The position numbers were made by a program, and so were the translations under genes. This document shows positions 21,319 through 41,600 of a stretch of DNA of 64,000 nt, piece after piece. Position 1 is the first letter of the stretch. Each line of letters starts with the position of its first letter. Source of the stretch: Oikopleura dioica (taxonomy: Eukaryota > Animalia > Chordata); the NCBI GenBank assembly GCA_907165135.1, contig OU015566.1:11904001-11968000 (forward strand), given 5' to 3'. The notes beneath the pieces are model-generated. The model was not told the origin of the DNA, made no database searches, and was given only the letters and a program-made list of their open reading frames with translations.

Positions 21319-24300
21319 ATGTCAACCTGGCGAGAGATTTTTGCCAGTTTGGCCATTCTTACAGGGGTGCAGGCCACCCTTGATGGACCAAGACTAGAGC
21401 CACCGGATCCGATCGTCAGAGATGGAGACACTATCAAGTTCTGGGTAAGTTTATACTTCGCGTTCTTTAATTATCATAGAGTTTTCTATTGAACAATTTA
21501 TAATGACTTGACTACAGTCAAGACAAAAATATACCCCGTTCAATCTAAAAACCTTGAAAACCAGAAAGAAAAAAACTAAATTGCAAATTGTGTAAAAATA
21601 ATTTTAGGGATCCAACCTGGAATTACTTGGAGAATACAACATGGACATGCAATTTGTTTTGCATGAAAGTGTCGAAATCATTTTCCAACCCGTTGAAGAG
21701 AGCTTTGACGATCCACCAACTTGTACCGACCTATCAATCGAAGAAACTGACCCGTTTTACCCTCAGCGAGAAGCACTCGACTACCCCTACTTTCTTCAAT
21801 GTACAGCGACAGGAATCAAAGAAGGCCAAGAATATGACCTTCGAATCCTTTACGATATCCCTGGTGTGCCAGCCTACGAGCCTTGCGAAGTTGATCCTGC
21901 AGAAGATCTTGATCCGATGCTCCAAATAGACGAGGACTGGATGATGGCACCTCAAGGTAACACTGGAGTCTCGACCTGCTATTCAATCAGAGGCATCGAA
22001 GCCGAAGAGCTTACACGAGAAGAGCTTCTGGCAGAGATTCGTTCAAAAAACGCAGATGAGGGAGCTAGAGAACGTCGATCTGGCTCCCCAAGTATCTCGT
22101 CCATCGTACCTAGCAGCGGTTCAATCCTCGGGCAGCAACTCATCACCATTGTTGGTCACAATCTTGCTTCTAACAAGCTCAATATTCCCGGTGCCAACCC
22201 TGACGAAAGCTCCCCAGATGGAGACGACTACGTTGTCTGGTTTGAGAAGGCTGGCGAAACGCCAAAATTCTGCGTCTTCGACAGACAGTTGACTCTTCTA
22301 GCCCGTCACGTTGGGAATCACGAGTTCATTCTTTGCCGTACGCCAGCTGTGCATCGAGAGGGATGGTGGAGAATGAAACTCATTATTGACGGTGGAGAAA
22401 CTATAACTGGACCTCAAATGAGATTCGAGGTCAATTACGGACCGACAATTACCTGGGCTACTCCATACCTTTCTTCGCCAGCGGCGCATCCAGATGAGGA
22501 ATACCTCGAGGAACGAACCTTCTGGTCGATGTGGATAGATCTTGACACAAATAACAACGGGGACGAAGATGAACGATTTTATAGGCATCACAGAGATAGA
22601 AAACTTTACTTAGCTCCAGCTTGCCGCTCACCTATCGACTGGGAAGTTTTCGACAAAAACAACAACCAAACATTTGTCCAGTCAGTCAACTTCAACTCGG
22701 ACGGGCTTCCGCGTGCACAGACGTTCAACCTCAAAGAGGGTTTCGATTGCACTGACAGCGCGCAAACAGAGACATTAAGTGAAATCGCTATGTGCCCAGA
22801 TGTTAAAATCCGATACCTTTGCTCCGAAAATGCTATTGACTTCCAAGGACGACTCTACACGGTGAATTTCAATGCAGTCGACGATGGAAACGATGAGGAT
22901 CCCAACAGAATGTTTTTCCAGCCCCGATTCATCTCTGAAGACGGTCTCAATATGGGTGAATGTGAGATCTCAATTAAGAAAGACGAATCATCAGAAATCG
23001 AGCTCTTCCGGCAGATTACAAGTGGCAATAACGGTATTCTCCGATGCCTCGCAAGAGTTGAAGAGCCGGGCCAGTACAACTTTACCTACACAACACAAAA
23101 TGAGGGAGCATCTGTGAACTCTAGAAACTTCAATAACGTGCTTGGGAACGCAAATCTTGATCCTTTTAACTTCGAAATCTATCCAATGATTCGCTCGGTT
23201 CATCCAAACATCGGCTCAGCTGAAGGTGGCACCGTGATAACAATCACTGGAACTGGATTTTCGAGCACGCTTGGTGAGACAGCCGTTGAACTTGGTGGAA
23301 AATCGTGTAAAATTTTGACGCATTCTGCTACGGAGATTACCTGCGTGACAAGTAAAGTGGAGTCCCATAAGCGAAAATTCAACTGGAGCCCGATGCCAGA
23401 TGGAACCAACGATTGCCCAGGAAATGACATTTTTGGTTATCACTACACTCCTAATCAGATGTTTTGCCGAGCGCACTGTGAGGAAGAAGGAGGTTGTAGC
23501 CATTATATTTACGATCCTGTTGATGGAAGATGTTGGCTCAAAAGAAACACCCCCACATGCGGATATTACGGAGGAAAAGATCATCTCGTCGGCGAAATCG
23601 CGCTTGACATGGAGAGTACAAATGCAATTAAAACGACGCGATGCAGATGGGGAAAGGGAGCCGGCTATCAGGGTACCCTTGCTGTCGACAAAAACGGAGA
23701 TGCCTGTCAACCAGGCACTTATTGTAGAAATGAGGATGGTCTCTATGCTCTCCCAAGCTGCAATTCAACTGCTTCAAACACCATCGTCGAGTGCCAGATT
23801 ATAAATTGCGAGCGAGTTGGAGAATATCCCGGTAGTCGAGGATCAACTGTTAGATACGTACCTGATCAAAACGCATATACGTACGGACATGGCGCTTTCA
23901 ATCGCGAGTTTGAACCAGCAAATTTTGAAATAATCGATTCTTCGTATTTTTCGGGCTCCGAAAAATGGAAATGGACCGGTCAATTTAATCGAGAAGGCTA
24001 TTCAGCAAGAAATCAATTCTACTTTGAAGTCCCTCAGACTGGCTGGTACAGAATTATCTTCTCACATGATGATGATGCTCAATTATTGAGAATCAATGAA
24101 GACGGGTCCTACGAAACTCTTTACCATTACGGCGCCTGGAGTGATCTTTTCAACTATGCCGCTCGAGGACACAACCAGCAAACGAAAGACTTGTACTTGG
24201 AAAAAGGAAGTAAACAATTGTTCGAATACAACTTCAGAGAAGGTTGGGGTGGCGATCATGCTTCAATGGGTTTGCAATGGCTTGGTGACTTCAAGAACGG

Positions 24301-27300
24301 GCGATATGAAGATGATACTCAAACAAGACTTGGTTACTTCAAGGCGCATTCTCGACGCGGTTACAGAACAACGGGGACGTCTCAAAGCCACAACATCATT
24401 TTCAAGATGAACTACACAGGACTTGACTGGGAAGGAGAAACACCTATTCCCGAAGAACGAATTCTTAAAGCTCCTATCTATAGACTCATGTATTGCGGTG
24501 ATAATGTCAATGGCTCTCCAAACTGCAGAATAACTAGAAACATGGCGACAGCTCTTTGGCAGTTCAACAACAATGCTGATCGAGAAAAAAGAATCGAGGC
24601 CGTGATGAGAACGGACATTTTCAGAAACAAAATTCAGTACACTGCGAATCCACCAACAGGAGAAGAAGGCTACTGGAATTCGATCCATCAGTACACTGGA
24701 TATGAGGATAACTCGATTTGGCCAGGAAGTAATCACCACAAAATGGAATACGGTCAGTTCAGTGGAGCTAAGGCATTCAGAACAAAACCAGGTTACCACG
24801 TTTACAACTACGGCAAGGGCTACTTACAGTATAATGGAGATGATGAAGTACAACAAAGGAGAACTATAAAGCACTGGTGCACTGCCGTAAAGGGTGGCGT
24901 TTCCTTTTTGCAGGCGAAAATCAGGTTCAACTGGTATAACGCACAGGGAGAACACAGGCTACACGATCACTGGTGGTGGTTGGCTAATGACGAGAACACT
25001 GCATCACAGTATACTTCTCCTAACGACGGTAGAGACTGGGGATACCACTGTTTCAACTTAGTTGACATTCTCGATACACAAGCTGCAAATGTAGGAATCA
25101 GTATTGATTGGATGAATGATGTCTGGCTGACAGAAATGAAGATGTGGGCTCGCCATGATGACCGAAACGACCCGGATCCTGATCGAAGGTGGAGATTCGA
25201 AAATACAGTTTTCGACGAAACTGTTTTCGGCGATTACGGCTTCGAGAGGCCTGAAGCACATATCATCGAACATGCTGTCACTGTCAATGGAAAAGTCATT
25301 TATAATGTTGACGCGAAAGTTACAAAAAGCGGGGATCACAACGTTGTTCTTACTTATTCTGCAACAAACGTAGATGCCTGTAGCTTCAGCGTTCCTTTGC
25401 CAATGGTTGTTGAGCCCGATCCAACAGAGCTCTATGAGCAGGGACTAGACGGAGTAGACCATGTTGGTAATGGTAAAAATCAAACTATGGAATTCATCAC
25501 CGAAACTGAATATGAAATGCTTGGAGAACATCCCGCTGATATTGCAGACTACAAAGTTCAGCTAGGAAGAGAAGGTTCCTATCTCAACAAAGCAGTCGTT
25601 GATATCAAATATTCTGGATATTACTACCGCTGGGATACCCCGATCGACGGAACTCGCATGAGATACGATGCCTACGCAGTTGAACGAACTGTAAACAGTG
25701 ACAACGTTGCTCCTCATGTGACAACTACAGTCAGTTTCGGCATTGACGATGAAGACCAGACGTACTCTTTCACACATTCTACTTCTCATTCGACTGTTCA
25801 ATCTGAAATGCGCAGCCGTTGGCCCCATCTTCAAAAAATGAACTTGCAAGTAAGCAGACACGGTGACTGCAAAAATGGCTATTACTACGACTTCAAAGGT
25901 CATAATAGAGGCAATATTGGTCAGTTGATGGCGGAGCATTCAATTTCAGACGAATTTGTTGAGCGTAATCCAGATGTAGCAGCAGCGTTTTACAAGGTCA
26001 AGAATGATTTCTGGCAGGGCGGTCCTTACCAAGCCATTATTCCTGGTTCAATGATGTCTATTCCAAAGATCCTTCCAGAAGTAGTCGTCATCACCAATCG
26101 ACAAAGATCTAAATGCGGTGCTCACTTTCGTCAAGAAATGACACCCCTTACGTGGACAGATAATATGCTTTATGGTTGTTCTTTCACTTATTCTGACGAT
26201 CACACTCCAGTTGTCTACGACTCGTCAGTTGGAGAAGAAGATATCATCGCGGAAGGAGACGTCATTACTGTCGATGTTACTTTCCCAGGAGCAACTTCAG
26301 TATCCGATGATAGCTTCGTTGAAATTGGCGGAACCAAATGCGAAATCATAGCCCACGAAGATGTCCTTATTGGACCGGTCAATGGCACATTCCTGGCAAC
26401 AAGATTAACGGTCACTGTTGGCGCTGTCCCAGCTGGAGAAAAACTTTTGACCTTTAGTGATCCGTCTTTTGGAACAGCGAAATCCGATATCAAAGTCCAT
26501 TCAGGTCTGACTATCGACTCATATACACCAGAAACTGGTTCGATCTACGGTGGCTCTATAGTTACTGTAACCGGAAAGGGATTCGAGGATGGTCTTGTTG
26601 TTCAAGTCTTTGATACTCTTCAAGACTGTATCGCCATTGAAGGTGAAGTTACTTACAGTGAAATGAAATGTGTAACGCAACCTGCGAATGATTCCAGCAG
26701 TAGAAAACGGCGCCAGGTTGTGGATGAATCAACTCCAACAATCTCAGGAATGTCGAGGACGAAAATTTCGGTTATTGGTGGCGACATCATCACAATTACC
26801 GGCTCCAACTTCGGTTCAACAATGGAAGGTTCTAGCGTTGATGTGCAAGGCCTCTTCGCTGAAACCGAGTGCGTTCCCGATCCGAAATACGTACAACGAG
26901 GTTGTTTGGGATACAGAACAGCAAATTCTGGCGATTGGACTATCACCAGTTGGTCAAACACAGAAATCGTCGCCGTCACCGCCATGCTCGATCAAGGTGC
27001 TTATGAGCTTCAAATCACATCTGCAGACAACGGCTTCTCAAACAAGTTCAACTTCGATTACGCAGTCGAGATTACTGGGGTCTCCCCGCGGTATTCATCC
27101 CTTGTTGGCGGTAGAATGATAACAATTTCCGGTTTCGGTTTTGCAACCGACAACATAATCCCGAATCGCAAGCTCAATGCTGACACAACTATCGAAGTAT
27201 TTGCTGTTGGTGGTCTTTCTGGAATGTGGCGAAATCGATGCCATGTCAAAGAAGTCTCTAAAACAGAGATTGTCTGCGAGACAGGATATGCAATCAACGA

Positions 27301-30300
27301 GCCAATCTTGATGAGCACAGGAGAAAATTTCCCAAACATAACAATCAAAGCAGGCGAAGCTATTCGATTCAAATGGTCGTTCACTGTCGATGGTAAAGCA
27401 CCAAATATGCAATTCCAGGAGTGCGACGAGCCAAACTGCGAAGAAGCTTCATCAGATGATAAAATCTGGGGTCCTAAAATCGTAGAGTCAACTGGCGACT
27501 TTGTTCGCCTTTTCCAGACACCTGGCACCTACTACTACTCTACTGGATATATCGACCAGGCTTTCAGCGCCTGGTTAAATGGTATGATCATTGTTGAAGA
27601 AGCAGAAGAGCGGCCAGAATGGCTTGAAGTTATTGTCACAGACAGTTTCTCTGATCGACAATGGGGCGGAGTTAACGAAAAATGGCCACATATTGCTGCG
27701 CACGTGGGCACCCCACCTGCTTTAGATGGCTCTGATGATGGTGCCTCTGAACTTGGATCTTGCACAGCAACGACAACTAATACCGCTGCACCTTTTGAAG
27801 GGGCATTGGAGAAACACTCAGTCATTTATTCTTGGGCTTTTACGCCCGTTGCAGACAACTGGGTCGCTAACGGTGATTTAACACCATTTATGGAGGCGAA
27901 TTTAACGATTTCCAACTTCGAAGTATCCGGAGATTGCTCCGCGCAAACTCAATTTGCTGCAGTTGAACGATATGGTCCTGAAATCCGTCCTAAGAATTAT
28001 TTCTACAAAGGATCTGATGGCATTAGCGGTACATACACCATCGATCATGACAATATGATGGACCCGTTGATGGAGTACGAATTTGATTTCGTTCTCGCTG
28101 GCCGCGGAAGAGCTTACTACAACAGTTACGATGGTTCTGCTAAATTCAAAATCAAGCCTGTTTCAACTGGTGTAAGCACTACTTCAGTTGGTGTCAAGGG
28201 AGGATGGGAATTGAAAATTACTGGTGCAGGATTTATTGCCCCAGACAAAGATCTTCTTGAAAGCGATGATGTTATTTCAATCGATACGGAAATTCATCTC
28301 GGTAAAGAACCTGCTTATCGCTGTGAAATCTCATCACTTAGCTACACTGAAATCGTTTGTAAAGCTCCGGAAATGTGGAGAGGAATCGCAGATCGACAGG
28401 AAAATTTGAACATCTTCTTCCGACACGACAACGACTTCTACAACGTTGACAACTCATTCGATATCAATCAAGTTCCAGTTTCTGCGAATTTCGCTGCAAC
28501 TCCTCAAATCAATTCAGTCCAGCCCGAATCTGGAATCAGCCATGATACTGCTCAAATTACCTTCAATGGTGTAAATTTGGACGGTGCTCAAATTGTTGTT
28601 GATGGCCAAACACTGACGGGATGCGCAGGAGATAGCACTTCCCAAACGTGCGACGCTCCCACCCTCGCTGCTGGATCATACGCAGTGAGTGGAACTGCTG
28701 ATAGCGGAATCATCTACGTGGCACCACTTGTCAGCGTAAATGCTCTCTTTGTTGCTGAATCGATCACTCCAACTTCTGGATCAGTAAATGGTGGCCAACA
28801 CGTCACTATCTCTGGATACGGTTGGTCTGAAGATATTTCCATTACTGTGACACAGAACGGTGGCATTATTTGCTCTCGATGTCCAATTACTTCTATTGGC
28901 GAAGATGTCGTTGTTTCAATGCCTTCCGGTAAAAGTACTGGCCTCGCTGCCATTGAGATCAAACATGAGTTCATCAAACACGATTCCTTCAAATTCGATT
29001 TCACTTTTGTCGACATTGGCGGCGCAAGTCCCACAACAACGTCTGATGTAAGTGCTCTTTCTGCCGGGGATTCTGTGACTCTTGATTTGCCTGCTGGAAC
29101 TTGCTCTAACTCACTTCGAGTTGATCTAGTGCTGAATATGAGCCCATGTGCTGAAGGAGCTCACAACTGTCATTATGCTGCTGAATGCACTCCCAATGCC
29201 GACGGAATTCAATACACCTGCGCTTGTCAAGGGATTTACCGCGGTGATGGCTTTTCTTGCTCCAAGTTCAATATCAAAAATGCGCAAGAGCTCACTACAG
29301 TATCAGAAAGTACCTGCTACAATACTGGAAACAATTTTGTTTGGAATCTTGCGAAATTCGAGTCTTTGGAAGAGGTCACAAATGTTCTTTCTACCGAAGC
29401 TGGCAATATTTTCTTGAACATAAAATACTCGACAAGTGACAACTTGCTCAAACACGACTTAGATGGATCTGCTGTCGCCTGGGCTGATCAAGTTACCCTT
29501 CCATCTGAAGACTCCTGTCTTGTCTATCATGTTGGCTCGGGAGAGCTTAGCTTCGTTGCTTGCTCAAACACTCATCAAGTTGCATGCGAGTCGTACGATG
29601 AAGAAGATTGCTTCTCTGACCAAGGCCAGTACTACAGAGGAGATCTCGATCATTCGGAAGGGTTTACTTGTGTAAATTGGGCCGATGTGCCATCAATTCC
29701 CGGAACAACCACTGAAGCCAATATGGATCTCAACGGAAATTCATGCCGTAATCCTGACAAGAGAATTCAAGGACCATTTTGTTACATTTCAACAGAAATC
29801 GATGAAGGGGAAAGCGAACCTTCTTGGATTCAATGCTCCGTTCCTAACTGCGCTATGAAAAGTCAGAAAGTTTGCCATGTTGTCACTGAAAGTGGTGCAA
29901 TAATTGGCCGAACTCACGATTCGTACATTCTTGCGCCTAATAATGATAAATTTTATGACAACAGAAAAAATATTCAAACTGGATTCGCTGAATTCGACGA
30001 TGGCTTTGCCATTTTCAAGTTTTTGAATGACAAAAATCCGGATAGCAATCACGAATGCTGGGAAATTAAGAGTGGTGACGCAAGTGATGGCGATCGCCCA
30101 GTTATTGCTAGGTACCAGAAGCTTTCTGATTGTCCTCGCTGGCAGTTGCAATTGCAGCCCGATGGCCGTTATCGTTTGAGTCAAGGCGACTTCTATCTGC
30201 GAGAAACATTAACAGGAAGGGACAGGATTCAAGGTCAATTGCTGACTGGACTTTTGTATGACGAGGACACTATCTCCGGAATGACTTTTGATCTTCAGTG

Positions 30301-33300
30301 CGGCAATCAAGGCGACCACAGAGAAGCAAAGGTTAATCCCGTCGAGATTTTCCACGAGCTCTCTGGTACATGTTCTGGTGACTCTTTGGCCGTCACAATG
30401 CCCGCAGTTGCCTCTGGTTCTTACAGTCTTCGAGTCAGAGATTCAACAAACGGATATTTCTCTGGGAAAGTGGATGTGGCATTCTCTCTCGCTCTTGATT
30501 CGGTCTCACCAGCGTCTATCGGTCAGTCTGGTGGACAACCAATCACTCTTTCTGGCGCCGGCTTCAGTGCAGAATCTTCTGTTGTTACCGTCGATGGTAT
30601 TCAATGTGTCGTACAAACAGTCAATGCTGAAGGAACTGAGTTGACATGCATCTTTGAAGACCTCAGCCATATCACGGAATCAGCTGCTGTTGTTGTTCAA
30701 GTTTCAGTTTCAGATATGTCAACTGGTTCTACTCTGACTGCAGAATCAAGCGTTTTTGTTGACATCACCTTAACTCCTCTCATCACAGGTTTCAGTCCAA
30801 CAAGAGGCGGTTCAGCTGGAGGCACTAGAATAACATTCACTGGATCAAACTTAGACGCAGGAGACGATGCCATTGTCTCAATTCACGGCGTTGTCTGTAT
30901 CACTCTTTCAAGGACAAGTTCAGAGCTTATCTGCGAAACAGAACCGTACAGTGGTCTCAACATTCCAGTCCAGCCAAAGATCGAATTTGTGAATTTTGGC
31001 AACGGTCTCTTCAGCTCCGACGATCTTGAGTTCTGGTACATTGATCGATGGTCGAGTACATTCACCTGGGGTTGCACTGATGGCAGTTGCAAGCCAATGG
31101 CAGGAGATATCGTTGTTATTCCAGAAGGAAAAGTCATTCTCCTGGATGAGTCGACGCCGATTCTCGCTGTTCTCATTGTTGACGGAGGAACTGTTCTCTG
31201 GGACCGTGTTCATGGCATCGAGCTCAGCACCGAATATGCCGTTGTGACAAACGGTGGACACTTTGAAATTGGAAACGAGGATGAGCCTTTCTGTGATCCA
31301 AGTGGCGATCGATCAATTCCTTTTGATGCGACAATTACAATGTATGGTCACCAGCGCTCTATTGAACTCCCAATCTACGGTGCTAAAGTATTTGCTGTTC
31401 GCCGTGGAACCATCGACCTCCATGGTTGTCGCGTTCATACTTCGTGGACTCACATGGACGAAACTGCCGAAATTGGTGACAATACAATCAAACTTACTCA
31501 TCCCGTCGCAAACGATTGGGTTGCAGGAGATCAGATTATTATCGCTACAACTGGTGATTTGATGCATCTCCATCATTCAGAAACTGCTTATATTTCGGAA
31601 GTAAGTGCTGACGGATATACACTGACTTTGAATGACACTCTTCGTTTCCGACATATGTCGGAATGTTCTGACGGATTTGACTGGGCTGGAACAATCTGCC
31701 AACGGGCTGAAGTTGGTCTTTTGTCAAAGAACGTTCTCTTCCAAGGCAATCGTAACTTAGACTGGGTCGAAGAACTTGACGAATGCGAGCTTGGAATCGG
31801 AACCGCTTTCGGAACCCAGACTTGTTTCCAAAATCGATTCGGCCACGAGGTCGGCTCCGATCAGCTAGGTGGACACTTATTCCTTCATATGGTAGACTCT
31901 GCCCGAATCCAGTATGTTGAATTCAATTTCGTTGGACAGGCGTTCCGACTCGGTCGATACCCGATTCACTTCCATATGACAGGAGATGTTGGAAATACCA
32001 ACACCTACGTCCGCGGTAATTCTGTTCACGAAACATTCAACCGAGCCGTCACAATGCACGGTGTCCACAATCTTCTTGTAGAATACAATGTTGCCTTCAA
32101 CGTTATGGGTTTAACCTATTTCCTCGAAGATGGCATCGAAGAAGACAATATAGTGCAGTATAATTTAGCTGTTATGACCAAGAAATCATCTTCTCTTCTG
32201 AATATTGATTCTATTCCGTCTTCGTTCTGGATGCCAAATCCAAACAATATTGTTCGACATAACGCTGTTGCTGGTTCCTCTCACTTTGGTTACTGGTTCA
32301 ATTCGCCACAACATCCTACAGGTCCATCGGCCACAAATTCTATCTGCTGCAAAAACCGACCTCTCGGAGAGTTCTGGAATAATACCGTCCATTCTTCTGG
32401 AAAATACGGTCTTTGGGTATTTGTCGATCTAACTCCTACTGGACCAAATGGTGATTGTGGGGAGGGAGCTCCAAAAGCACTCAAGATTGGTGAGATTCCA
32501 GCTAATGCAACTATGCCAGAAGGCGTTGATAGAAACTCTGTCTATGGCCTCCACACTTGGAACAACGAAAGAGGCGCTGAAATCACGACCGGTGGTGCTG
32601 TCCAATTCCACAACTTCATCGCTTCAGATAATGCAATCTCACAGCTTGCAGGAAAAGAAACGTATCTGAATTCATTCGGTGTCTGTCCTGGTGTTGATTG
32701 TCCTGGTAATGTTCAAGCCTTTGTGCGTTCGATCGTAATCGGAAGAATGAAACATGATCCTCATGTCAATAACTGTGGAGCTATGGGAATCGAAACTCCT
32801 TGGGAAGAATTCGCATTTACAGTTCACGACATTCACTTCTTTAACTTCGACGCGCCAGGTCGAGGCGTCTGTACTGCTGTGAACCCATGCTATGGATCCG
32901 ATGCATTCGACTGCGCAGCTACCTGTTGGTACACTGATGTTCGCTGGACAAACTCGCCTCGAAAAATAACGACTGACTGGGAGCACGAATATGCTATCCG
33001 AGATATTGATGGCTCATTTACTGAGAATGGCGGTGAGGAAGTCTACGTCGTCCCTCAATCGGGTGCTTACGATCCAAATCACTGTAGCTCAGTTTGGCCA
33101 GGACCTGATGGAACGAATGCCAAATTCGTTGGACGCGGAGTTCAAATCTGCCCTTACCAAGACGGAGTTTTCAAACCTCACAGATTCCCATTTAATAACG
33201 TTTCTCCATCGAACCTTGAAGGAACAAACACTCATGCTACCTCACCTTACGGCACTGCTTCTTCTCCTTTCCGTGATTGCCGACCTCGAGGAAAAGGATG

Positions 33301-36300
33301 GATGATGCTGCTCAATCAAGGCCAAGAACATGTGCTCCAGTGGCAGGGATATGAACACGTGACAAATATTTCGTATTCCGCTGACATGTTCCACTTGGAG
33401 CAAAACGACTACTTGCACATTGCTCATGAGTTTTACCAGCGCATCGATTACACAAATCTTGGAATGAAACACGATGAAATTCCGACAATCACGAACGAAA
33501 CACATAATAACCTCGATTATCACATCACATCCGATGACGAATTCATCTCTACCAAGGAATATAAACTCACTTACATGCTCAGAGGTCTGAAGAATCCAAC
33601 AATGTCAAGCACAAAGGGCATCTACCCAGCAAAATATGAAGTTGATGGACGAGGTGATGGAACTCATGGCAGAAAAACAACTTGGTCAATGAAAATGTAC
33701 AAGTGCTTCTATCCTCAATGTATCAAACCGACAACAACCACCCAACCGCCGACAACAACAACGACGGAAGCAACAATTGAGTGCGAAATCGGCACGCCAG
33801 GTTGCGAAGACTGGTTCACTGTTTCAGGCTGGGACGGAAATAATGAAACGAATGTCTTCATCAGCGAGAAGCGAATTATCCGAATGACAAGCATTCCAGA
33901 AGAGCTAAGAGATCCAGAAAGGCCAAATGTGTTGAAAGCGACTAAATTCCTTCTTGATGGCGAACTGGTCATCGAAGATATCGAGGAGGATATTGAAATT
34001 GAAATCGAATCATTTATTGTCAACTCAGGCATTTCTGAGACAACTTGGGGCAAAACAAGAAAACGACGAGACTTGGTCGATAGGTTTACCGGAAAACTTA
34101 TCATCGGAACTGCTGAGAAGCCAATTCCTTGCGATAGAACAGTAACTATCCGTCTGATGGGAAATGTTTCTGAAGCAGAAGAGTTCGGAGCGCTTGGAAA
34201 TTCAATTCCGATCGGTGCAAAAGCACTTGGTGGATACGGTTCTATTGAAATGCATGGTTGTCCACGTGACAAAACATGGACTAACCTTGCTACAACAGTT
34301 CAGGCTGGGGAGAATTCAATCACGCTGAGTGAGGATGCCGACTGGAAGGTCGGAGAAGAAATCGCCATCGCTTCGAGCAACTTCGATCAAGCAGAGGTCG
34401 AGTTCTTCTCAATTACTGCAAAAGAGGCCCGAACTTACACACTCAACCAGACTATCCAGTTCAGACACTTCGGTATCGACACCAATCTCGAAGATGCTGA
34501 TGGAAATCACCTTGGCGCTCCAGTTATGCTTTTGACAAGAAATATCATCCTAGATGGAAGTGACGGTGCAAATGGTCAGGTTGGAGGAAGAGTTCTAGTC
34601 GCCAGTACCATCGAGAAAGATGGAGATGATACAATCTTCCGATCTGGTTATGGCCAGTTCAGCTACGTTCAATTCAAACAAATGGGTCAATTTGGCTACA
34701 ACGATAATACCGATCCAAGATTCCAGCTCGCGTTTTACAAAATCGACCCTACTGCTAGTGGCGATAGAAAGCAATCATACGTTCGTGGCTGCTCTTTCTT
34801 CCATGGTTTGGCGACTGCTATTGGATCGGGAATAGGGGTCAACGGTCTTGAGATGAAGGACAATGTCATTGTTGGTGCGCCTGAAGATGGTATCCGCGTC
34901 CTCGGAGAAGATGCTGTCATAGAGAATAATGCAATCGCTTCTATTTGGGAACGATCAGCTTGGGCTAACATCAACGGAGGAAATTCAGACTTTGATAGTG
35001 CGCAGATACCAGCCGGTATTGATTTCAAGAATGCTCAACGGTATACAATGAAGAACAATCATGTTGCCGGTGTAATGGGCCCCTGCTTCCATGGTTACGG
35101 TCAGACTTGCACTGGCGATCTCGAGGAATGCTCAGCTGACGTTTACCCAACTGACCCGAAAGTCGTTGGAAATATCGGCAGTGGATGTCTTGTTGGCTAT
35201 TACATTCTCAAGCAGCCCTTGGGCAGATGCCAAAAAGTATCAGGATTCTTCCTTCACCACACTACTACTGCAGTTTACTTCCAATCTACTTCTCAACGAT
35301 TGGTCGTTTCCGATAACGTTCTCGTTGATAATTCTGTCGCCCTTTACACTGTTCATGCTGGACCTAATGCTGAGTCAAAACGATACGATCCTAAAGCTTC
35401 TGTGACTTACAAAAACAACATAATTGTCGGTCGATCTGAGCATTGGGAATGTGGTGTAGATAATGAACATTCGACAATTCTAGGATTGAGTGGTGAATTC
35501 GCCCCGGGTACAAGCAGTCCGAAAGATCATGCGGCTATGGTTGGCAGTGACTTTTTGAGTTCTTACAACAAATTCCCTGGAAAACCAATGTACAAAGCAT
35601 TTGTGAAGACCCCAGCGATTTACGGACGAACATGTGTTGTTGCAAACGCTTTTACTAAGTTTGATGGAAGATGCGGGGACAAAGATGTCATCTTCAGCTC
35701 GAACAAGAAAATGGAAGACTATTCGCATCCGACCTATTTCAAGGAAGGAAACACCTTTGATAGCAACGTGGCCACACTTAGCAAAGTTGCCAAGTTTTAC
35801 AGACCAACAACTAGCTTTGTTAACATTGCCGATTGTGTTGATCTGCACTGCGACGGGCACAAGAAGCAAATGATCATCGACGAAACTGGCGATCTTCTAG
35901 GAACACCAGGCTTCCTCCATTCTGAGTCAGAATACAAATGGGAAGGAGTTACTCGAAACGGACATACTTACACTGACACTCGCCCTGGACTTGGCGATTA
36001 CCGACTTCCGAAAACGATGTTGACGACACTTGACGGCAAAAAGATTTCTGTGGAAGACTACGCACCTGAAAAGGGAGTTATTCGTGATGAAAACTGCGTA
36101 TACGATGCTTCTATTCCAGCCTGGCACTGTACTGATTCCCTCAAAATGATCATGATGAACTATCAATTCATGGATGTAGATCACATGGTCCGTAGAATAA
36201 CGCCTCTTGCAGTCAGATCCGAAACCGGATATGTTGACATTATCAACGGCCCTGCAGATCATTCTTGCTGCATTGGGTACGCTTGCATGATCCGTTTGAG

Positions 36301-39127
36301 CAGTTTCTGGTCTCATCACGCTTGCAACCACCACTACGACTACTACTTTACATCAACGCTTCCGAAGCGAATGAACTTCCACTTGCCTGACTACAATAAT
36401 CAAAAGTGCAAGATTTATATAACATTCTACACAATGAGACCAAACCGAATGGATGTCAAACAAGACGGAATTTATATGATTCCAACCAACGCCCGCTACA
36501 TTGGCGACGAAATCGAATGGGAACGACCTCGAAGAGAACTTCATCTTCCTTCTCTTGACGGCATTAATAATGCTGCAGGAACGAATTTCTTCGATCGCCA
36601 GGAACAAGCGGTTCATATGATTTTCGAAACCGGTCACATTTACAATCTTCAGCTGAAATCGACGCTGATTCTTGAGTTAGATGTTATGACCGAATTGACC
36701 GAAGACGAGTTCTATGACAATGGAAATATTGCCGTTAATATCGCTGCTCTTCTCGGAATCTCACCCAGTCGAATCAAGATCGTTAACGTCATTCGTGAAA
36801 CAAATGAAGAACGACGAAAGCGACGCGAAGCCTCCGGTTTGTATTACTATGGCAATGAGCGACTTCGACGATCCGACGATGCAGAAAGCTCATCCTTGCA
36901 GTTTGAAATTGGCAGCAATGATGACAGACCTGAAGATGGCGATAACGAGCTCGACGAGGAAGATTTGGCCAATGAGAAGGCAGAAGTTGACGCTCTCAAC
37001 GAAGTCGGCGCCACGCTAGCCAAACAATCTCTAGCAGACGGAAATCCACTTGGTGCTGCTGCAGCATCTGCAATCGTAGATCAGGACCCCTCTGTTTCTG
37101 TCGGCGAAGTTGCTGTTGGCATGGCTGACCCACCAACAACAACTGAAGATCTGCCAGAATGGTTCGATGAGGAAAATCCAGTTGGAGAAAGTATCATTCA
37201 AAAACTCGGCTTGGACGAAGAGGCAATCGGCGTAGACGAACCTGGCAGTATCGACTTTGATTCTCTGCGAACTCAAATTTTGGCTGCCTCGGATGGTGAG
37301 ATCGATTTGGAAACAACTAAGACTGCAGAAGAAGTAGCAAACGAAAAACAAGCCGCTAAGGATACTGCAGCCGAGCCAATTGTTTACAAGGTGCCAACAA
37401 CAATGGTAATTGATGAAGAACCGACCGGAATTCAAATCGAACAAGTCGACATCCAATCATTCGTTCTGCACGTGTTAGATCAGGACGGAGAAATGATGAC
37501 TGTCGTTGGTTTCCCACTCAACCCGGCCACTTGTGTTGTTTCTCTCAAAGACGGAGAAACTGGAGAAATCATCGGAGTTGACGAGGTTCCTTTCGAACCT
37601 GGAACTGGTTATGCCACTTTTGACGCCTTCCAAGTAAACGGAACAGACAAATCAGTCGAATTCGAGTTCAATATTGCCTTCCCTGCTGATTTTGATCTGA
37701 ATGCAACTGTTCCAGCAGTTTTTTCTTCTGCTCACGAGTTCTTGGCAATGCCCGAGACAGATGGAGACGGAACGTGCGAAGTTTTCGAGGGAGAGGGCTT
37801 CGACAAGCAGGAGATTTGGAACGATGACTGCTCACTCATTTGCACTTTGCCATGCAAAGATGCTGGTGGACTTTTGTCTACCTCGCCAAAGTGCCAGCTC
37901 AGAGATACGACGGAATGCGGATCTTATGGCTCTTGCAACGCTGGAAACGGATGCGAATGCGACTTAGCATCGATGCCTAGACCAGATCAGGTAGACTAAA
38001 AATCAAAGACTTGAATCAATAAAGACCCTTAGATCAATGTCGCTGACCATATTAGCTTCTCATGCGACTCCGAAGGAATGGTGGTAAAGGTCGACAAATG
38101 CGTCATGCATCGATTCGGTTTCAGACTTGAGCATTTGGCGATCAACGGAATCGACCGCTCCTATGACGGGTATTTTCGAAAACGTCTGACTCAAACTACT
38201 AATAAATTTTAGACCTCTTCAAGGATCTGGTTTGAACACCTGCGTCGGAAAACTCGATTACGAGACTGGAACTGATTACAAATTTACTATCTACGGCGGT
38301 GATGCTTGCGGAATGGAGAAAACATTCAACGAAACGCATGTTGTCTACACAAATGCCGTCTCTGGTAGCTTTGGTCATAACATAGGAGGAATCAAGCGAA
38401 AGGTGGAGATGTATACCGAGTTTTCATGTGCTTTCGAAACTTCGATTCGTGTCTCGGCAGCTGTTGGCAGTGTCGGACGCAGCACAATCCACAAGGAGCT
38501 CAAACGAGAAATGGGTGTCTTCGACGCAAACTTGATGCTCTTTACCGATATGAGCTTTTCGACGCCAGTGACTGGCACTTACACCGTCGAAGTCCCTAAC
38601 CAAGTCTTCGTCGGAGCATTTGTGGCTGATCTTCACTCGCGATACGCTTTGGTTCTTAATACTTGTACTCTTTCTATTGAAGGGGAAGATGACATGACAC
38701 ACGAAGTTATTTCTAATTCCTGCGTCAATCCCGATGTAAGTTATAAGAATTGATAGTAATTTCTTCATAAAAAATCGACTCATAGCAGCAAAAATAAATA
38801 TTCCCGTAGGAAACTGGCTTCGTGGAGATCTACAACAACGGCGACTCCGATCAATCTCGATTCTCCTTCAAATCCTTCATGTTTATCGGATTCGAAGATC
38901 ACGAGCAAACTCTTACTTGCAGCATGAAGATTTGTGACACTGAGAGCGAAGCATGCACTCCTTCTTGCTCTGCTCGAAGACGGTAACTATCCCAAAAAGA
39001 TAATGATTAACCCTTGTTCTTAAGGAGAAGCATCGATGAAAGCGAACTTATCCATGCTACAGCACGGTTTAATACTCGAAAAGAGCAACCAAGAATCTCC
39101 CGATGGGAAGCTATTATCAGAGGCTAA
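21319..39127 (+). CDS. Fibrocystin-L (PKHD1L1)-like giant secreted protein with a C-terminal ZP module, ~5,814 aa
   Basis: join(21319..21444,21608..37990,38033..38169,38213..38735,38810..38982,39025..39127), all GT-AG and in frame. Contains a signal peptide, many IPT/TIG repeats, PA14, two G8 domains (RWSSTFTWG...), PbH1 repeats (GQAFRLGRYPIHFH), WxxW, PAN, kringles, EGF and ZP-N/ZP-C. No TM helix. Confidence 0.9.
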
Positions 39128-39243
39128 TTATTTCTGAAAAACATCATTCCCTGAATCAAATAATTTATTTCAAATAAATTATCTATTTATCAAAAAAATT
39201 CTTTAAAATATATTTCACAGTTTCCATACAGTAAATTTCCGAA

Positions 39244-40275
39244 TCAGAGACCAAACTCATTCTCAAAAGTTTCTTCCTTTTCTGGACTCACTGCGGTCTT
39301 ATCTTCTTCCCAATGTGCTCGCACAAAAAGAAGATATAGTAAGCCACCGATTGCTCCACCAATAAGCGGTGCCAAAAGAGGGATCCAAAAGAAGAACTCG
39401 GAGTTTGTATCTTCTATTCCGCTAAATGCAACATCGCCAAGAACCATCGCTGCGAACAATCGTGGCCCCAAATCACGAGCAGGGTTAATAGCGCCACTAA
39501 AATTCCATCATTACAAGTAAAGATTAATTTTGCTTACCCTCCATGATTTCCATAAGCGAGGCCGATGGCAGTGGCGGTGAGTCCAATCAAAAGCGGGTTG
39601 GCTGCATTAGGCATCAGATTTTTCTCGTCGGTAATTGCCGCAATCAGTGTGACCAAAATCATTGTTCCGATTATTTGGTCAAAAAACATCTCACCCTAAG
39701 AGAAATAAAAATTGTGATCAATAAAAAAACCAAACCGTTGAAAGTTTGATATCTTCTGTTGGGCAAGTTGCGAAGAGACAGACCAAATCCTAAAAAAACG
39801 ATAAAATATTTACTATGTTTTCTGATAACCTGGTTTTCGACTCCGTTATATGATTGCCCGTTGAAGACTCCGTACACGACGGAAGCTGCAAGAAACATTC
39901 CAAAAATCTGCCCAGCGACATAGATACAAAAGCCGCCTAAATTTTCGATAATCCCATTTCCAAGTCTTCCAGAAAGTGCAGCATAAGTTGTCACTGCTGG
40001 GTTCACGTGTCCTCCAGAAGATCCAACGCAAACATAAATGCCAATCGCCACACCTAGCCCGCCACAGATTGCTCCGTGAACTGAAGTTTCATGAATATTT
40101 CTTCAATAAAATCAAATCCTAACTCACCAGAACTTGTTTCACCATAGAGGCCCTGATGAGCTCCCGCGATGCCAATTACGGCCAGAAAGAAGCTTCCAAA
40201 AGTCTCTCCCAAAAATTGTCTAATCCGTTTTCGTCGAATTCTCAAAAATCGCTGAGCCAAATCCTCGATAGTCAT
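39244..40275 (-). CDS. Aquaglyceroporin (AQP3/7/9/10-like)
   Basis: QFLGETFGSFFL, SSGGHVNPAVT, second box GAINPARDLGPRLF (NPARD glycerol-channel signature) and FFWIPLLAPLIGG. Confidence 0.93.
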
Positions 40276-41600
40276 TTTTTCTTCGATTTGCAAGGCGAGC
40301 AGTTAACCCTAATATAATTATCGAGTGCCTCCTTCAGTGCGTCGTCTCCACAAATACTGCCCTGATCAAGCACCTGAGTTGTCTGAAATAGCTAATATAA
40401 AGATTATTTATCTATAAATGGTTTTTTGAAAAATTGATCTCACTACGAATTTATCCGCAAAAAAGGGCGGAAAAATACTTACAGGGTCAATTTCTGTTAT
40501 CGATTCTGAGTGAATGAGAACATGGAAACTTTCGAGATAATTTGCGCCTCTTTGCGGGCATTTAAAATTTATGAAAGGCCATTTCCGCGTTTCAGAAAAA
40601 TCTTGACCATCAGCGGAACATGACCCAGTGGCCTTGAGGTCAAAGACTGAGGTCATTAATTTTTTGTCGGGACAAATGAATTTTATTGAAATGAATATAA
40701 CCCCGTCTCGTCAAGGAGATCAGAATAGAACACTATTCCGTAACATTCCTTGTCTTGTCCAAAGTTCCCATCGCTATGGTCACGTTAAATGATTACTTTT
40801 TATGCTTGCGGTTGAAGTGGAATGGATTAGTCCTTTCTTCGAAGAGTTCGATCATCCTTCCATTCTGAAGATTCTCTTGGCATGAATAATCATCACAAGC
40901 AGAATCCAACAACGTTGACAACGATAAGAATGTAGACGTCACATGGGAAGGTTACGGACTCAGCGGAGTGAGTGTCGGGGAGTGCTGCTGCGTCCGATAG
41001 ACCCTGGGCGGCGAGTAGAATATCTCCTTCTGAACAGAGATCTTGTAAGAACACTGAACTTCTTTAAGAACCTAATAGGTGTCTGAATTGCAGAACGGAC
41101 TGAAATCATGGACATTCGTCTTAGAGAAAAAATCGCGCTTCAAAATCGAGTAAGTTCTTCTTTCGTAGTGGATCTGTAGATTTTTTTATTTGATTTTTGG
41201 TTAATAACATACATTTACTTTAACTAGGAGATCGAACAACTGAAAGAAGCATTAGGTATGAAGAGTGAACTCGCGAATATGAAGGCAATGAATTCCGAGA
41301 TGAAGCAAACTTTTGAGTACTCGAAGAAAATCATGGACGACCTCAAAATGGTGAAAATTAGATTTTTTCTTTTTTATTATTATTTGAGCGAAACCACAAG
41401 GAAGCAAACGAAAGAAAGATTGAAAGTCTTCAGTCAATTTTGATGGAAAAAAGCCGAAACGAAATCGAACTTCAGAGGAAAGAGATTGAGAGATTGGAAC
41501 TGGAACTGGGAGAGAAGATGAAGAAAAGCCAGCCAGTCACAAAAGAGGAAGAAAAAAGAATTAAAGATTTGGAAAAGCTTAGAAAAAGGTTGGGTGCGAG

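What the first reader, a model, noticed from the sequence alone, without database searches (positions are those of the whole stretch)
21319..39127. Giant fibrocystin-L-like protein whose membrane anchor is replaced by a polymerising ZP module
Canonical PKHD1/PKHD1L1 are type-I membrane proteins. This ~5,814-aa product keeps the TIG/PA14/G8/PbH1 core but ends in EGF, ZP-N/ZP-C, a furin site (ARRRRS) and an EHP-like tail, then stops with no TM. ZP modules form filaments after furin cleavage, so this may be a secreted fibre carrying carbohydrate-binding or -modifying (PA14, G8, beta-helix) heads. It is a plausible component of an external matrix such as the larvacean house or feeding filter (inference).
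Basis: partly seen in the sequence, partly recalled or inferred. Interest (0 to 1): 0.8.

Follow-up and report, generated by a model that had tools for sequence, protein, structure and literature searches.

The report
Secreted giant fibrocystin-L protein with ZP tail
A larvacean-type (Oikopleura) gene really encodes a 5,814-residue secreted relative of the kidney/ear protein fibrocystin-L whose membrane anchor is replaced by a filament-forming zona-pellucida module; it is one of a family of such fusions, so it is probably a building block of an external matrix, though where it is used is untested.

Summary
It is a six-exon gene (21319-39127, +) with a signal-like exon, one 16,383-nt exon and four small ZP exons, giving 5,814 aa.

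**Domains:** Pfam finds many TIG repeats, PAN, EGF, Kringle, two G8 domains, a CEMIP/TMEM2-type beta-helix, and ZP-N/ZP-C. PA14 is only weakly supported.

**Splicing:** Seawater metatranscriptome contigs carry three of the four 3' splice joints, including exon 2 to ZP. The fourth is supported by only 8 nt.

**Relatives:**
- A diverged 10.7-kb contig (L001) reads beta-helix to ZP to stop as one intronless ORF.
- Other metagenome contigs and proteins (L003, L004, P0181 of 5,692 aa) show the same G8+ZP order.
- Named fibrocystin-L proteins of fish and bivalves have no ZP and end in a hydrophobic anchor.

**C-terminus:** I found no TM or GPI signal, and a convergent aquaporin gene starts about 117 nt downstream.

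**New here:** The family's convertase site (RRKRR) is kept just before the point where homology to canonical proteins stops.

**Prior knowledge:** An anchor-less fibrocystin-like house protein (oik14) and eight O. dioica fibrocystin homologues are published. I found no description of the ZP fusion. This scan had already noted two paralogous fusions elsewhere in this genome.

**Not shown:** House localisation and polymerisation are inferred.

The parts
21319..21444 (+). Exon 1, 42 codons: start codon and signal-peptide-like N-terminus (hydrophobic core IFASLAILTGV, then QA|T)
   Evidence: Read from sequence. GT at 21445. No RNA evidence for this exon. A paralogue (P0183) starts with a clear signal peptide.
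21608..37990 (+). Exon 2: 16,383 nt, 5,461 codons without a stop. It holds the whole fibrocystin-L-like ectodomain, the linker, an Ig-like domain and a Cys-rich EGF-like end.
   Evidence: ORF. A TAG lies directly upstream at the acceptor. 34% identical over 2,172 columns to fish fibrocystin-L P0001.
23840..24442 (+). PA14-like domain (weak)
   Evidence: GLEYA E 0.015, below cut-off. Paralogues give PA14 0.0049 and GLEYA 5.5e-4. Aligns with the fish PA14. AF2 core pLDDT 67-89, with Foldseek PA14 hits at 3e-4 to 1e-3.
23411..23554 (+). PAN/apple domain
   Evidence: PAN_1 9.8e-5, 22.6 bits against a cut-off of 21.4
29147..29851 (+). EGF_3 (29147-29260) and Kringle (29609-29851), inserted among the TIG repeats
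   Evidence: EGF_3 9.8e-7 and Kringle 1.1e-10. Kringle is also present in relatives L004, P0180 and P0182.
31088..32413 (+). First G8 domain (31088-31456) and CEMIP/TMEM2-type beta-helix (31865-32413)
   Evidence: G8 4.1e-23 and CEMIP_beta-hel 1.9e-55. TMEM2 ectodomain 8c6i at 7.9e-46.
33848..35077 (+). Second G8 domain (33848-34291) and second beta-helix (34841-35077)
   Evidence: G8 5.1e-11 and Beta_helix 1.5e-4. Colinear with the second unit of fibrocystin-L.
36812..36826 (+). Polybasic RRKRR (exon-2 residues 5069-5073): the family's conserved convertase-type site. Homology to canonical fibrocystin-L ends just after it.
   Evidence: Conserved in L001, P0020, P0181 and P0183 (RRGRR in P0180, RRRRR in P0182), and in fish and bivalve fibrocystin-L. 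Homology ends at residues 5064-5136. A predicted conserved site is reported in PKHD1L1 (PMC10942330).
36788..37990 (+). Replacement tail, part 1: acidic linker (25% D/E), Ig-like domain, Cys-rich EGF-like domain. No Pfam match.
   Evidence: Composition. Conserved at 55% in P0020 and 38% in P0006 and P0009, each continuing into ZP-N. dN 0.09 with dS saturated against L001.
38033..38169 (+). Exon 3: start of ZP-N
   Evidence: ZP-N profile positions 1-28. Joint 37990/38033 is present in metatranscriptome contig X1 with 40 nt on the far side. 93% identical to L001.
38213..38735 (+). Exon 4: rest of ZP-N, the interdomain linker and most of ZP-C
   Evidence: ZP-N 31-100 at 9.6e-5 and ZP-C 2-78 at 3.8e-6. 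GP2 2e-5 and uromodulin 5e-5. Joint 38169/38213 is present in X1.
38810..38982 (+). Exon 5: end of ZP-C and the first part of the polybasic site (…CSARRR)
   Evidence: ZP-C 86-133 at 2.5e-7. Joint 38735/38810 is present in X1 with 174 nt on the far side.
39025..39127 (+). Exon 6: completes ARRRR|S, then a 33-residue tail with an EHP-like strand (ELIHATARF) and a conserved end (…ISRWEAIIRG), then stop TAA at 39125-39127. No hydrophobic anchor.
   Evidence: Read from sequence. An X1 contig continues with 8 nt of exon 6 after 38982/3. L001 reads through this joint in frame. AF2 of the L001 module puts a strand at residues 294-304, after the RRRR.
39173..39178 (+). AATAAA polyadenylation signal
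   Evidence: Read from sequence. L001 also ends about 12 nt after an AATAAA.

Best explanation
This is one real gene for a secreted protein of about 640 kDa, derived from fibrocystin-L (PKHD1L1).

**What is kept.** The TIG arrays, the PA14-like domain, the two G8 + beta-helix (TMEM2-like) units and the family's juxtamembrane domain with its convertase-type site (RRKRR) are all present, with PAN, EGF, Kringle and WxxW modules added.

**What is replaced.** Where canonical proteins continue with a short stalk and a membrane anchor, this one continues with an acidic linker, an Ig-like domain, an EGF-like domain and a uromodulin/GP2-type ZP module. That module ends in RRRR, an EHP-like strand and a stop.

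**Inferred mechanism.**
- The protein enters the secretory pathway through its signal peptide.
- The EHP strand keeps the ZP module closed until a furin-like or other serine protease cuts at RRRR.
- The ZP modules then assemble head to tail into filaments.
- The giant ectodomains project from those filaments. If RRKRR is also cut, as in fibrocystin, they would be held only by the cleaved SEA/MAD-like fold.
- In effect, a ZP filament takes the place of the membrane as the platform.

**Likely site of action.** The most likely place is an external matrix of the animal. The larvacean house or its filters is the leading candidate, because a fibrocystin-like oikosin and a ZP oikosin are both made by the giant Fol cells.

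**Shown:** the gene model, the splicing of exon 2 to the ZP exons, the domain order, the absence of an anchor, and conservation under purifying selection in several diverged lineages and paralogues.

**Inferred:** both cleavages, polymerisation, ligand binding and tissue.
For: **Gene model and frame.**

**Domains.**

**RNA evidence.** Contigs of metatranscriptome X1 are about 95% identical to the window. Their differences fall at multiples of three. They carry joints 37990/38033, 38169/38213 and 38735/38810, plus 8 nt across 38982/39025.

**Relative L001.** It aligns at 75% nt identity and has one ORF of 2,431 aa running from beta-helix 1 to the same TM-less stop, with all four introns absent. 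On that uninterrupted sequence ZP-C scores 1.1e-18 and ZP-N 4.3e-8.

**Selection.** Against L001, dN is 0.04-0.10 in every block from the G8 units to exon 5, and dS is 1.8 to saturated. The tail after the cleavage site is looser (59% identical, dN/dS 0.31), as expected for a discarded propeptide.

**Other relatives.**
- L002 is genomic-like and has the same introns.
- L004 and L003 place Kringle/TIG/G8/beta-helix upstream of an ORF in which EGF, ZP-N and ZP-C are continuous.
- P0181 (5,692 aa) carries G8 + CEMIP + TIG + ZP-N + ZP-C and is colinear with exon 2 at 32% identity.

**ZP fold.** The AF2 model has pLDDT 83. The best fold matches are the uromodulin precursor 4wrn (3e-16), UMOD and GP2 filaments, and ZP3.

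**No anchor.**. Canonical proteins end in a hydrophobic segment with a Kyte-Doolittle 19-residue mean of 1.7-3.7.

**Conserved RRKRR.**, with literature on the homologous site.

Against: - No expression data exist for this paralogue in any tissue.
- Three bulk oligo-dT RNA runs labelled with the species gave no true reads. This may reflect stage or lineage, so it is not a test.
- The published in situ primers for oik14 and oik20 do not match the window, so this gene is not shown to be a known oikosin.
- Half of the reported fibrocystin homologues are not preferentially oikoplastic.
- Exon 1 and the exon 5/6 joint of the window itself lack solid RNA support (8 nt only).
- From my own knowledge of ZP3 work, membrane anchoring helps ZP assembly, so a soluble precursor may assemble differently or not at all.
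- Cleavage at either polybasic site is unproven.
- I did not verify the species myself.
Confidence: 0.65

Rival explanations
1. The protein is as described, but it is not a house component. It would build or coat another extracellular structure, such as gut or endostyle mucus nets, a sensory-cell surface coat (as PKHD1L1 does on stereocilia), the egg coat or the tail/fin cuticle.
For: [quoted passage not shown] The oik14 and oik20 primers are absent from the window. PKHD1L1 is a cell-surface coat protein in vertebrates.
Against: The one fibrocystin-like protein that has been localised, and a ZP protein, are both house proteins from giant Fol cells. The transcript is abundant enough in wild plankton RNA to be assembled at depth of about 10, which fits a bulk structural product that is made repeatedly.
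Confidence: 0.3
2. The ZP module does not polymerise. It would serve as a ligand-binding or dimerising module, as in endoglin and betaglycan, and the protein would be a soluble giant lectin or enzyme.
For: Endoglin and betaglycan appear among the fold matches. There is no membrane anchor to orient assembly.
Against: The best sequence and fold matches are the polymerising uromodulin/GP2/ZP3 types. A polybasic site followed by an EHP-like strand is conserved in every relative examined. This is the hallmark of regulated polymerisation, and to my knowledge it is absent from non-polymerising ZP receptors.
Confidence: 0.1
3. A membrane-anchored isoform exists through an unseen alternative 3' exon or a GPI signal, so the anchor is not truly lost.
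For: Only short contigs support the last joint. Anchoring varies in the family, and GPI-anchored PKHD1L1 is reported on platelets (title seen).
Against: The stop is followed by AATAAA and, about 117 nt on, by the 3' end of a convergent aquaporin gene. L001 ends at the same TM-less stop with AATAAA. L002, L004, P0010, P0016 and P0181 all end without a hydrophobic tail.
Confidence: 0.05
4. The gene model is an artefact: two adjacent genes, a fibrocystin-like gene and a small ZP gene, wrongly joined.
For: Public gene callers split the relatives into separate ORFs. oik14 and oik20 were published as separate proteins.
Against: A spliced joint between exon 2 and exon 3 is present in RNA-derived contigs. 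L001 has a single ORF across everything. In L003 and L004 the EGF-to-ZP stretch is continuous within one ORF. Exon 3 starts in the middle of nothing, with neither a start codon nor a signal peptide.
Confidence: 0.02

Closest known systems
Oikosin 14 (oik14) of Oikopleura dioica, house proteome (Hosp et al. 2012, PMC3390340)
   Same: A giant secreted fibrocystin-L-like protein with a signal peptide, IPT/TIG, G8 and PbH1 domains. Its TM was judged absent. It is made by a larvacean and found in the house.
   Different: - oik14 is 482 kDa, against about 640 kDa here.
- It was drawn without a ZP domain.
- Its in situ primers are not in this window.
- This gene is therefore a paralogue, or comes from a diverged lineage.
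Fibrocystin-L / PKHD1L1 of vertebrates and bivalves
   Same: - Colinear TIG, G8, beta-helix, G8, beta-helix core, 32-36% identical.
- PA14-like domain at the aligned position.
- Conserved polybasic site in the last shared domain.
   Different: - Canonical proteins are about 4,200 aa, have no ZP, PAN or Kringle, and end in a stalk plus a hydrophobic anchor.
- This protein has about 1,000 extra N-terminal residues and a tail of linker, Ig-like domain, EGF-like domain and ZP.
Uromodulin and GP2 (polymerising ZP-module proteins)
   Same: - The ZP-N/ZP-C module gives the best sequence and fold matches.
- The module is preceded by an EGF-like domain.
- A polybasic or serine-protease site followed by an EHP strand, and arms projecting from a ZP filament core (PMC7737619, PMC4755741).
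   Different: - Uromodulin and GP2 are GPI-anchored before cleavage, and their arms are about 300 residues.
- This protein has no anchor, and its arm is about 5,500 residues.
Alpha-tectorin and other large mosaic ZP proteins
   Same: A very large multidomain extracellular protein ending in a ZP module. Such proteins were among the best ZP hits (P0089, P0111, P0132).
   Different: Their N-terminal parts are NIDO, VWD, C8 and TIL rather than TIG, G8 and beta-helix. Alpha-tectorin is GPI-anchored (my own knowledge).
Teleost liver-made egg-coat ZP proteins (choriogenins)
   Same: ZP precursors without a membrane anchor that are secreted and assembled away from the producing cell (my own knowledge, not tested here).
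   Different: They are small proteins with no enzyme-like or lectin-like arm, and they belong to a different ZP subtype.
CEMIP / TMEM2 (G8 + beta-helix hyaluronan-degrading proteins)
   Same: The G8 + beta-helix unit matches the TMEM2 ectodomain 8c6i at 7.9e-46 and Pfam CEMIP_beta-hel at 1e-56.
   Different: They have one unit rather than two and no TIG arrays or ZP. Nothing here tests for catalytic activity.

Membership tests
Fibrocystin-L (PKHD1L1) family | Arrays of IPT/TIG domains | tested here: met
   TIG 4.9e-52 in the first 2,500 aa and 1.2e-30 in the next block, with many stretches
Fibrocystin-L (PKHD1L1) family | Two G8 + parallel beta-helix (TMEM2-like) units, colinear with canonical members | tested here: met
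   Two G8 domains, CEMIP_beta-hel 1e-56 and Beta_helix. 34% identity over 2,172 columns to fish fibrocystin-L.
Fibrocystin-L (PKHD1L1) family | PA14 domain in the N-terminal part | tested here: inconclusive
   Pfam signals are below threshold (GLEYA 0.015). The region aligns with the fish PA14 domain, and fold matches to PA14 domains are weak.
Fibrocystin-L (PKHD1L1) family | Last extracellular (MAD/SEA-like) domain with a conserved convertase-type site | tested here: met
   The motif and RRKRR align with ARRRKRS / ARRRRS of fish and RKKR / RRRR of bivalves. I did not model the fold of this domain.
Fibrocystin-L (PKHD1L1) family | C-terminal membrane anchor (single-pass TM or GPI) | tested here: not met
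   No hydrophobic stretch after exon-2 residue 5060 (best Kyte-Doolittle 19-residue mean 1.16). Canonical proteins reach 1.7-3.7 at their C-termini.
ZP-module proteins (polymerising type) | ZP-N followed by ZP-C | tested here: met
   The window's exons cover ZP-N 1-28 / 31-100 and ZP-C 2-78 / 86-133. On the uninterrupted L001 sequence, ZP-C scores 1.1e-18 and ZP-N 4.3e-8, both above the Pfam cut-offs.
ZP-module proteins (polymerising type) | Conserved cysteine pattern of ZP-N and ZP-C | tested here: met
   In the 32-sequence alignment the cysteines at query positions 16, 61, 83, 123, 202, 221, 262, 267, 274 and 278 are invariant or at least 90% conserved.
ZP-module proteins (polymerising type) | Polybasic cleavage site after ZP-C, followed by an external hydrophobic patch strand | tested here: met
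   ARRRR|S in the window. Similar sites are present in all relatives examined. The AF2 model of L001 has a strand at 294-304 after the site, and the best fold match is the uromodulin precursor 4wrn over 316 columns. The window's own tail is only 59% identical to L001's.
ZP-module proteins (polymerising type) | Membrane anchor (TM or GPI) downstream of the EHP | tested here: not met
   The protein ends 33 residues after the site, at …ISRWEAIIRG.
ZP-module proteins (polymerising type) | Forms filaments after cleavage | not testable with these tools
   Needs protein expression and electron microscopy.
Oikosins (larvacean house proteins) | Detected in house material and expressed in the oikoplastic epithelium | not testable with these tools
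   No tissue-resolved reads were obtained. The oik14 and oik20 primers are absent from the window.

The most novel reading that the evidence does not exclude
In larvaceans the fibrocystin-L family was converted from a membrane-anchored surface coat into a set of self-assembling matrix polymers.

- A ZP filament replaces the membrane as the platform.
- The convertase-cleaved giant ectodomain stays attached through the conserved SEA/MAD-like fold, which could make the attachment breakable under force.
- Several ancient paralogues, at least three in this genome, build different meshes of the house.
- The published oikosins oik14 (482 kDa, no ZP) and oik20 (42 kDa, ZP, no signal peptide, same cells) may be the two halves of one such gene. 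Their sum of 524 kDa equals the mass expected for the 4,751-aa paralogue noted elsewhere in this genome.
Probability: 0.35. Interest if true: 0.72.

Novelty: new variant of a known kind. Interest (0 to 1): 0.55.

Why it matters
The function of the huge ectodomain of fibrocystin (mutated in recessive polycystic kidney disease) and of fibrocystin-L (the stereocilia coat, linked to hearing) is still unclear.

Here the same ectodomain, including its conserved cleavage site, is attached to a self-assembling ZP filament rather than to a membrane. This arrangement is kept under strong purifying selection in several old paralogues.

That points to an extracellular, structural or glycan-handling role that needs no cytoplasmic signalling. 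It also offers a tractable system in which to study that role, because the larvacean house is made repeatedly in large amounts.

For larvacean biology, it supplies candidate fibre-forming subunits of the filters that drive a large share of marine particle flux. It also suggests that some published oikosin models are fragments of larger genes.

Tried and rejected
**RNA runs.** Bulk oligo-dT runs X9-X11, chosen by species label, gave no reads beyond a spurious 40-nt partial match at 36245-36286. They are no test of expression.

**Published primers.** The oik14 and oik20 in situ primers gave no match in the window at up to 3 mismatches. They also gave no match in the fetched loci or proteins at up to 5 mismatches or as peptides; only noise came back.

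**Protein searches that were blank or thin.**
- The word-based search with all of exon 2 gave only four hits and no larvacean model.
- The same search restricted to the ZP region of L001 gave nothing among proteins of 1,337-4,254 aa.
- The ESM Atlas gave no usable hit.
- These blanks reflect method limits. A search restricted to the conserved C-terminal domain did find G8+ZP proteins.

**ZP-seeded HMMER search.** Among the best 150 hits, none of the eight proteins of about 2,000 aa or more that I scanned has G8. They are uromodulin-like, tectorin-like or multi-ZP proteins, plus one cadherin.

**O. dioica scaffold.** The only O. dioica reference scaffold reached (FN655888.1) starts inside the ZP gene, so it says nothing about what lies upstream.

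**PA14 model.** Half of the model has low confidence.

**Joined product not used.** Exons were handled one by one, and the naturally intronless relative L001 stood in for the joined product.

**Other points.** I did not independently verify the species; O. dioica is a lead from other notes. It is supported only indirectly, by introns of 42-74 nt and by the fact that a ZP relative clusters with CBY40357.1.

Full report

Yes, at the base level. The ORF listing gives a single ORF of 5,452 codons at 21641-37999 on the + strand. Reading the flanks gives this model:

| Part | Coordinates | Notes |
|---|---|---|
| Exon 1 | 21319-21444 | 42 codons, signal-like: MSTWRE, a hydrophobic core, then QA|T |
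| Intron 1 | 21445-21607 | 163 nt; its acceptor TAG is also the stop that closes the ORF upstream |
| Exon 2 | 21608-37990 | 5,461 codons |
| Exons 3-6 | 38033-38169, 38213-38735, 38810-38982, 39025-39127 | separated by GT..AG introns of 42, 43, 74 and 42 nt |

**2. Domains.**

Pfam results:

| Domain | E-value | Exon-2 residues |
|---|---|---|
| TIG (many stretches) | 4.9e-52 and 1.2e-30 | throughout |
| WxxW (borderline) | - | 306-405 |
| PAN | - | 602-649 |
| EGF_3 | - | 2514-2551 |
| Kringle | 1.1e-10 | 2668-2748 |
| G8, first | - | 3161-3283 |
| CEMIP-type beta-helix | 1.9e-55 | 3420-3602 |
| G8, second | - | 4081-4228 |
| Beta_helix (weaker) | - | 4412-4490 |

The G8/beta-helix part matches the solved TMEM2 ectodomain 8c6i at 7.9e-46.

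The four small exons carry a ZP module whose profile positions run on across the exon borders. ZP-N covers positions 1-28 in exon 3 and 31-100 in exon 4. ZP-C covers 2-78 in exon 4 and 86-133 in exon 5. This is in itself strong support for those splices.

PA14 is the one weak claim:
- The window gives only a sub-threshold GLEYA match (E 0.015).
- Two paralogues give PA14 at 0.0049 and GLEYA at 5.5e-4 at the aligned place.
- A fish fibrocystin-L gives PA14 at 1.2e-7 at the aligned place.
- An AF2 model is confident only for its core.
- That core finds PA14 domains of yeast adhesins, an RTX adhesin and a beta-glucosidase at 3e-4 to 1e-3.

I call the region PA14-like and probable.

**3. One transcript or two?**

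Contigs of a seawater metatranscriptome (X1) cover 35000-39076. They differ from the window by about 5%, and the differences are spaced in multiples of three, that is, at third codon positions. The contigs contain:
- joint 37990/38033 (GT..AG, 40 nt on the exon-3 side);
- joint 38169/38213 (64 nt);
- joint 38735/38810 (174 nt; the four letters 'between' are two synonymous changes at the end of exon 4);
- a continuation of 8 nt that equals the start of exon 6.

The three species-labelled bulk RNA runs gave nothing usable.

A scan of metagenome contigs with the exon-4 protein gave independent evidence.
- **L001.** This 10,666-nt contig aligns to window 28322-38982 at about 75% nt identity. It holds one ORF of 2,431 codons that reads from the first beta-helix through the EGF-like end, ZP-N, ZP-C, ARRRRS and a 36-residue tail (window exon 6: 33 residues) to a stop. 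All four introns are absent at exactly the modelled borders, and an AATAAA lies 12 nt before the contig end. It looks like a spliced mRNA contig. It has one frameshift near its position 3300-3400.
- **L002.** It is about 74% identical and genomic-like, with the same introns.

Against L001, dS is 1.8 to saturated. dN is only 0.04-0.10 in every block from the G8 units through the acidic linker to exon 5. The tail after the cleavage site is looser, at 59% identity and dN/dS 0.31. That is what one expects of a discarded propeptide.

**4. Is there an anchor?**

The best Kyte-Doolittle 19-residue mean in exons 3-6 is 1.16. The C-terminus (…ISRWEAIIRG) is not hydrophobic. The single value above 1.6 in exon 2 lies inside a TIG domain, with Cys-rich extracellular modules on both sides.

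The stop is followed by AATAAA at 39173-39178. About 117 nt after the stop comes the last exon of a convergent aquaporin gene (MIP profile 203-222 of 222). L001, L002, L004, P0010, P0016 and P0181 also end without a hydrophobic tail.

Canonical fibrocystin-L proteins of fish and bivalves end in a hydrophobic segment with a Kyte-Doolittle mean of 1.7-3.7.

**5. What exactly was replaced?**

Homology to canonical fibrocystin-L stops at exon-2 residues 5064-5136, which corresponds to canonical residue about 3930-4010. The last shared element is a conserved motif (…FYDNGNIA.NIAALLGI…VIRE…) followed by a polybasic site, RRKRR at residues 5069-5073.

That site is conserved in L001, P0020 and four paralogues. 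It is also conserved in fish (ARRRKRS, ARRRRS) and bivalve (RKKR, RRRR) fibrocystin-L.

The literature places a highly conserved predicted convertase site of PKHD1L1 in an exposed loop of a MAD/SEA-like domain, leaving a 236-residue stub (PMC10942330). It also places a convertase cleavage in fibrocystin at residue 3616 (PMC6992733).

So the larvacean protein keeps the family's processing site. It replaces only what lies beyond it, the stalk and anchor. The replacement is an acidic linker (25% D/E), an Ig-like domain, a Cys-rich EGF-like domain and the ZP module.

**6. What kind of ZP module?**

By sequence, exon 4 is closest among solved structures to GP2 (2e-5) and uromodulin (5e-5).

Instead I folded the uninterrupted L001 module with a 32-sequence alignment.
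- Mean pLDDT is 83.
- The cysteines are conserved.
- A beta-strand sits at residues 294-304, just after the RRRR at 280-285. This is the position of an external hydrophobic patch.
- Foldseek ranks the uromodulin precursor 4wrn first (3e-16, 316 aligned columns), followed by uromodulin and GP2 filaments, an egg-coat filament and ZP3.

For uromodulin, cleavage that removes the EHP is what triggers polymerisation into filaments with projecting arms (PMC4755741, PMC7737619).

**7. Is the architecture found elsewhere?**

- A full HMMER search of 1.84 billion representatives with the L001 ZP module gave 529 hits.
- Among the best 150 hits, the eight proteins of about 2,000 aa or more that I scanned are uromodulin-like (D8C+ZP), alpha-tectorin-like, multi-ZP arrays or a cadherin. 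None has G8.
- The closest hits are fragments: P0020 at 55% identity, and P0006 and P0009 at 38%. Each consists of the same acidic linker, Ig-like domain, EGF-like domain and ZP.
- Their contigs show what lies upstream. L004 (22 kb) has a 4,584-residue ORF with Kringle, TIG, two G8 domains and a CEMIP beta-helix. It then has the ORF in which EGF, ZP-N and ZP-C are continuous. L003 is colinear as well.
- A search restricted to the conserved C-terminal domain found P0181 (5,692 aa) with ZP-N, ZP-C, G8, CEMIP beta-helix and TIG in one model, and P0180 with ZP-N and G8.
- In that search every named hit (fish, bichir, bivalves) lacks ZP, and most carry PA14.
- P0181 is colinear with exon 2 over 5,300 residues at only 32% identity, so the paralogues are old.
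- A ZP relative 36% identical to L001's module, which matches the tail of P0181, clusters at 90% identity with CBY40357.1 of Oikopleura dioica.

The fusion is therefore a family trait of Oikopleura-type sequences. It is not a feature of PKHD1L1 orthologues in general.

**8. What is already known?**

- Hosp et al. 2012 (PMC3390340) found oik14 in the house. It is 482 kDa, has a signal peptide and IPT/TIG, G8 and PbH1 domains, and shows 'overall similarity to fibrocystin'. [quoted passage not shown]
- The same paper lists oik20 separately. It is a 42-kDa ZP protein without a predicted signal peptide, from the same cells.
- A 2026 preprint counts eight fibrocystin homologues in O. dioica. [quoted passage not shown]
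- A full-text search for fibrocystin together with 'zona pellucida domain' returned only the Hosp paper. So I found no description of the fusion.
- This scan had already noted two other fibrocystin-ZP genes in this genome, of 4,751 and 5,691 residues. The second is probably the P0181 type.
- The present gene is a third, larger paralogue. Its relation to oik14 is open, because the primers do not match.
- The masses of oik14 and oik20 add up to 524 kDa, which is the mass expected for the 4,751-residue paralogue. This suggests that they may be halves of one gene. I could not test it.

**9. Mechanism and verdict.**

Shown:
- one gene, whose 3' exons are spliced as modelled (RNA joints for three of the four 3' introns; the exon 5/6 joint rests on 8 nt plus L001, and exon 1 has no RNA support);
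- a fibrocystin-L core, a convertase-type site, and a tail of linker, Ig-like domain, EGF-like domain and ZP;
- no anchor;
- purifying selection, and a multigene family with the same order.

Inferred:
- secretion;
- cleavage at RRRR releasing the EHP;
- head-to-tail ZP polymerisation with ectodomains of about 5,100-5,500 residues as side arms;
- possible cleavage at RRKRR, with the arm held by the cleaved SEA/MAD-like fold;
- use in the house.

The main rival is a different extracellular structure in the same animal. I rate the finding as a new variant of a known kind. It is of moderate to good interest, and the scan had already encountered it at two other loci.

Noticed in passing
window 39244-40293 (minus strand): An aquaporin (MIP family, NPA motif) gene converges on the giant gene. 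Its last exon ends about 117 nt from the giant gene's stop codon, so the two 3' ends nearly touch.
   Followed up: partly
window 21608-37990; L004 1-9313: The 16,383-nt intronless coding exon is not peculiar to this gene. A 40-60% identical relative on a metagenome contig has an uninterrupted ORF of at least 4,584 codons, so giant exons are a conserved feature of the family.
   Followed up: partly
literature (PMC3390340, Tables S1, S4, S5) versus this genome: oik14 (482 kDa, fibrocystin-like, no ZP drawn) and oik20 (42 kDa, ZP, no signal peptide) are both expressed in giant Fol cells. Their masses sum to 524 kDa, which is the mass expected for the 4,751-aa fibrocystin-ZP paralogue noted elsewhere in this genome. 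They may be two halves of one gene.
   Followed up: no
window 39026-39124; L001 10499-10594; tail of P0010: After the EHP-like strand, the discarded tail ends in a conserved short motif: KEQP.ISRW..IIRG here, and KERPVMSRMQRIM in a 35% identical relative. The AF2 model predicts it to be helical. Its role is unknown; it could be a sorting or chaperoning signal.
   Followed up: partly
L001 about 3300-3400: The otherwise continuous relative has a one-base frame change (frame 0 is open over 1-3403, frame 1 from 3302). This is probably an assembly error or a strain mixture in the contig.
   Followed up: no
window 36245-36286: Ten reads of RNA run X9 match only this 40-nt stretch, and unrelated sequence flanks the match on both sides of each read. 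This is a short shared motif, not expression of this gene.
   Followed up: no
P0005 (3,056 aa, metagenome protein): The top hit of the ZP search is a protein with one D8C domain followed by ten tandem ZP-N/ZP-C modules. That is an unusual multi-ZP array, and it is unrelated to the finding.
   Followed up: no
window exon-2 residues 154, 1699, 4151 (RERR, RKRR, RKRR): Further polybasic motifs lie inside the ectodomain. The one at 4151 (KTRKRRD) is kept in L001 (KERKRRD). They may be additional processing sites.
   Followed up: no
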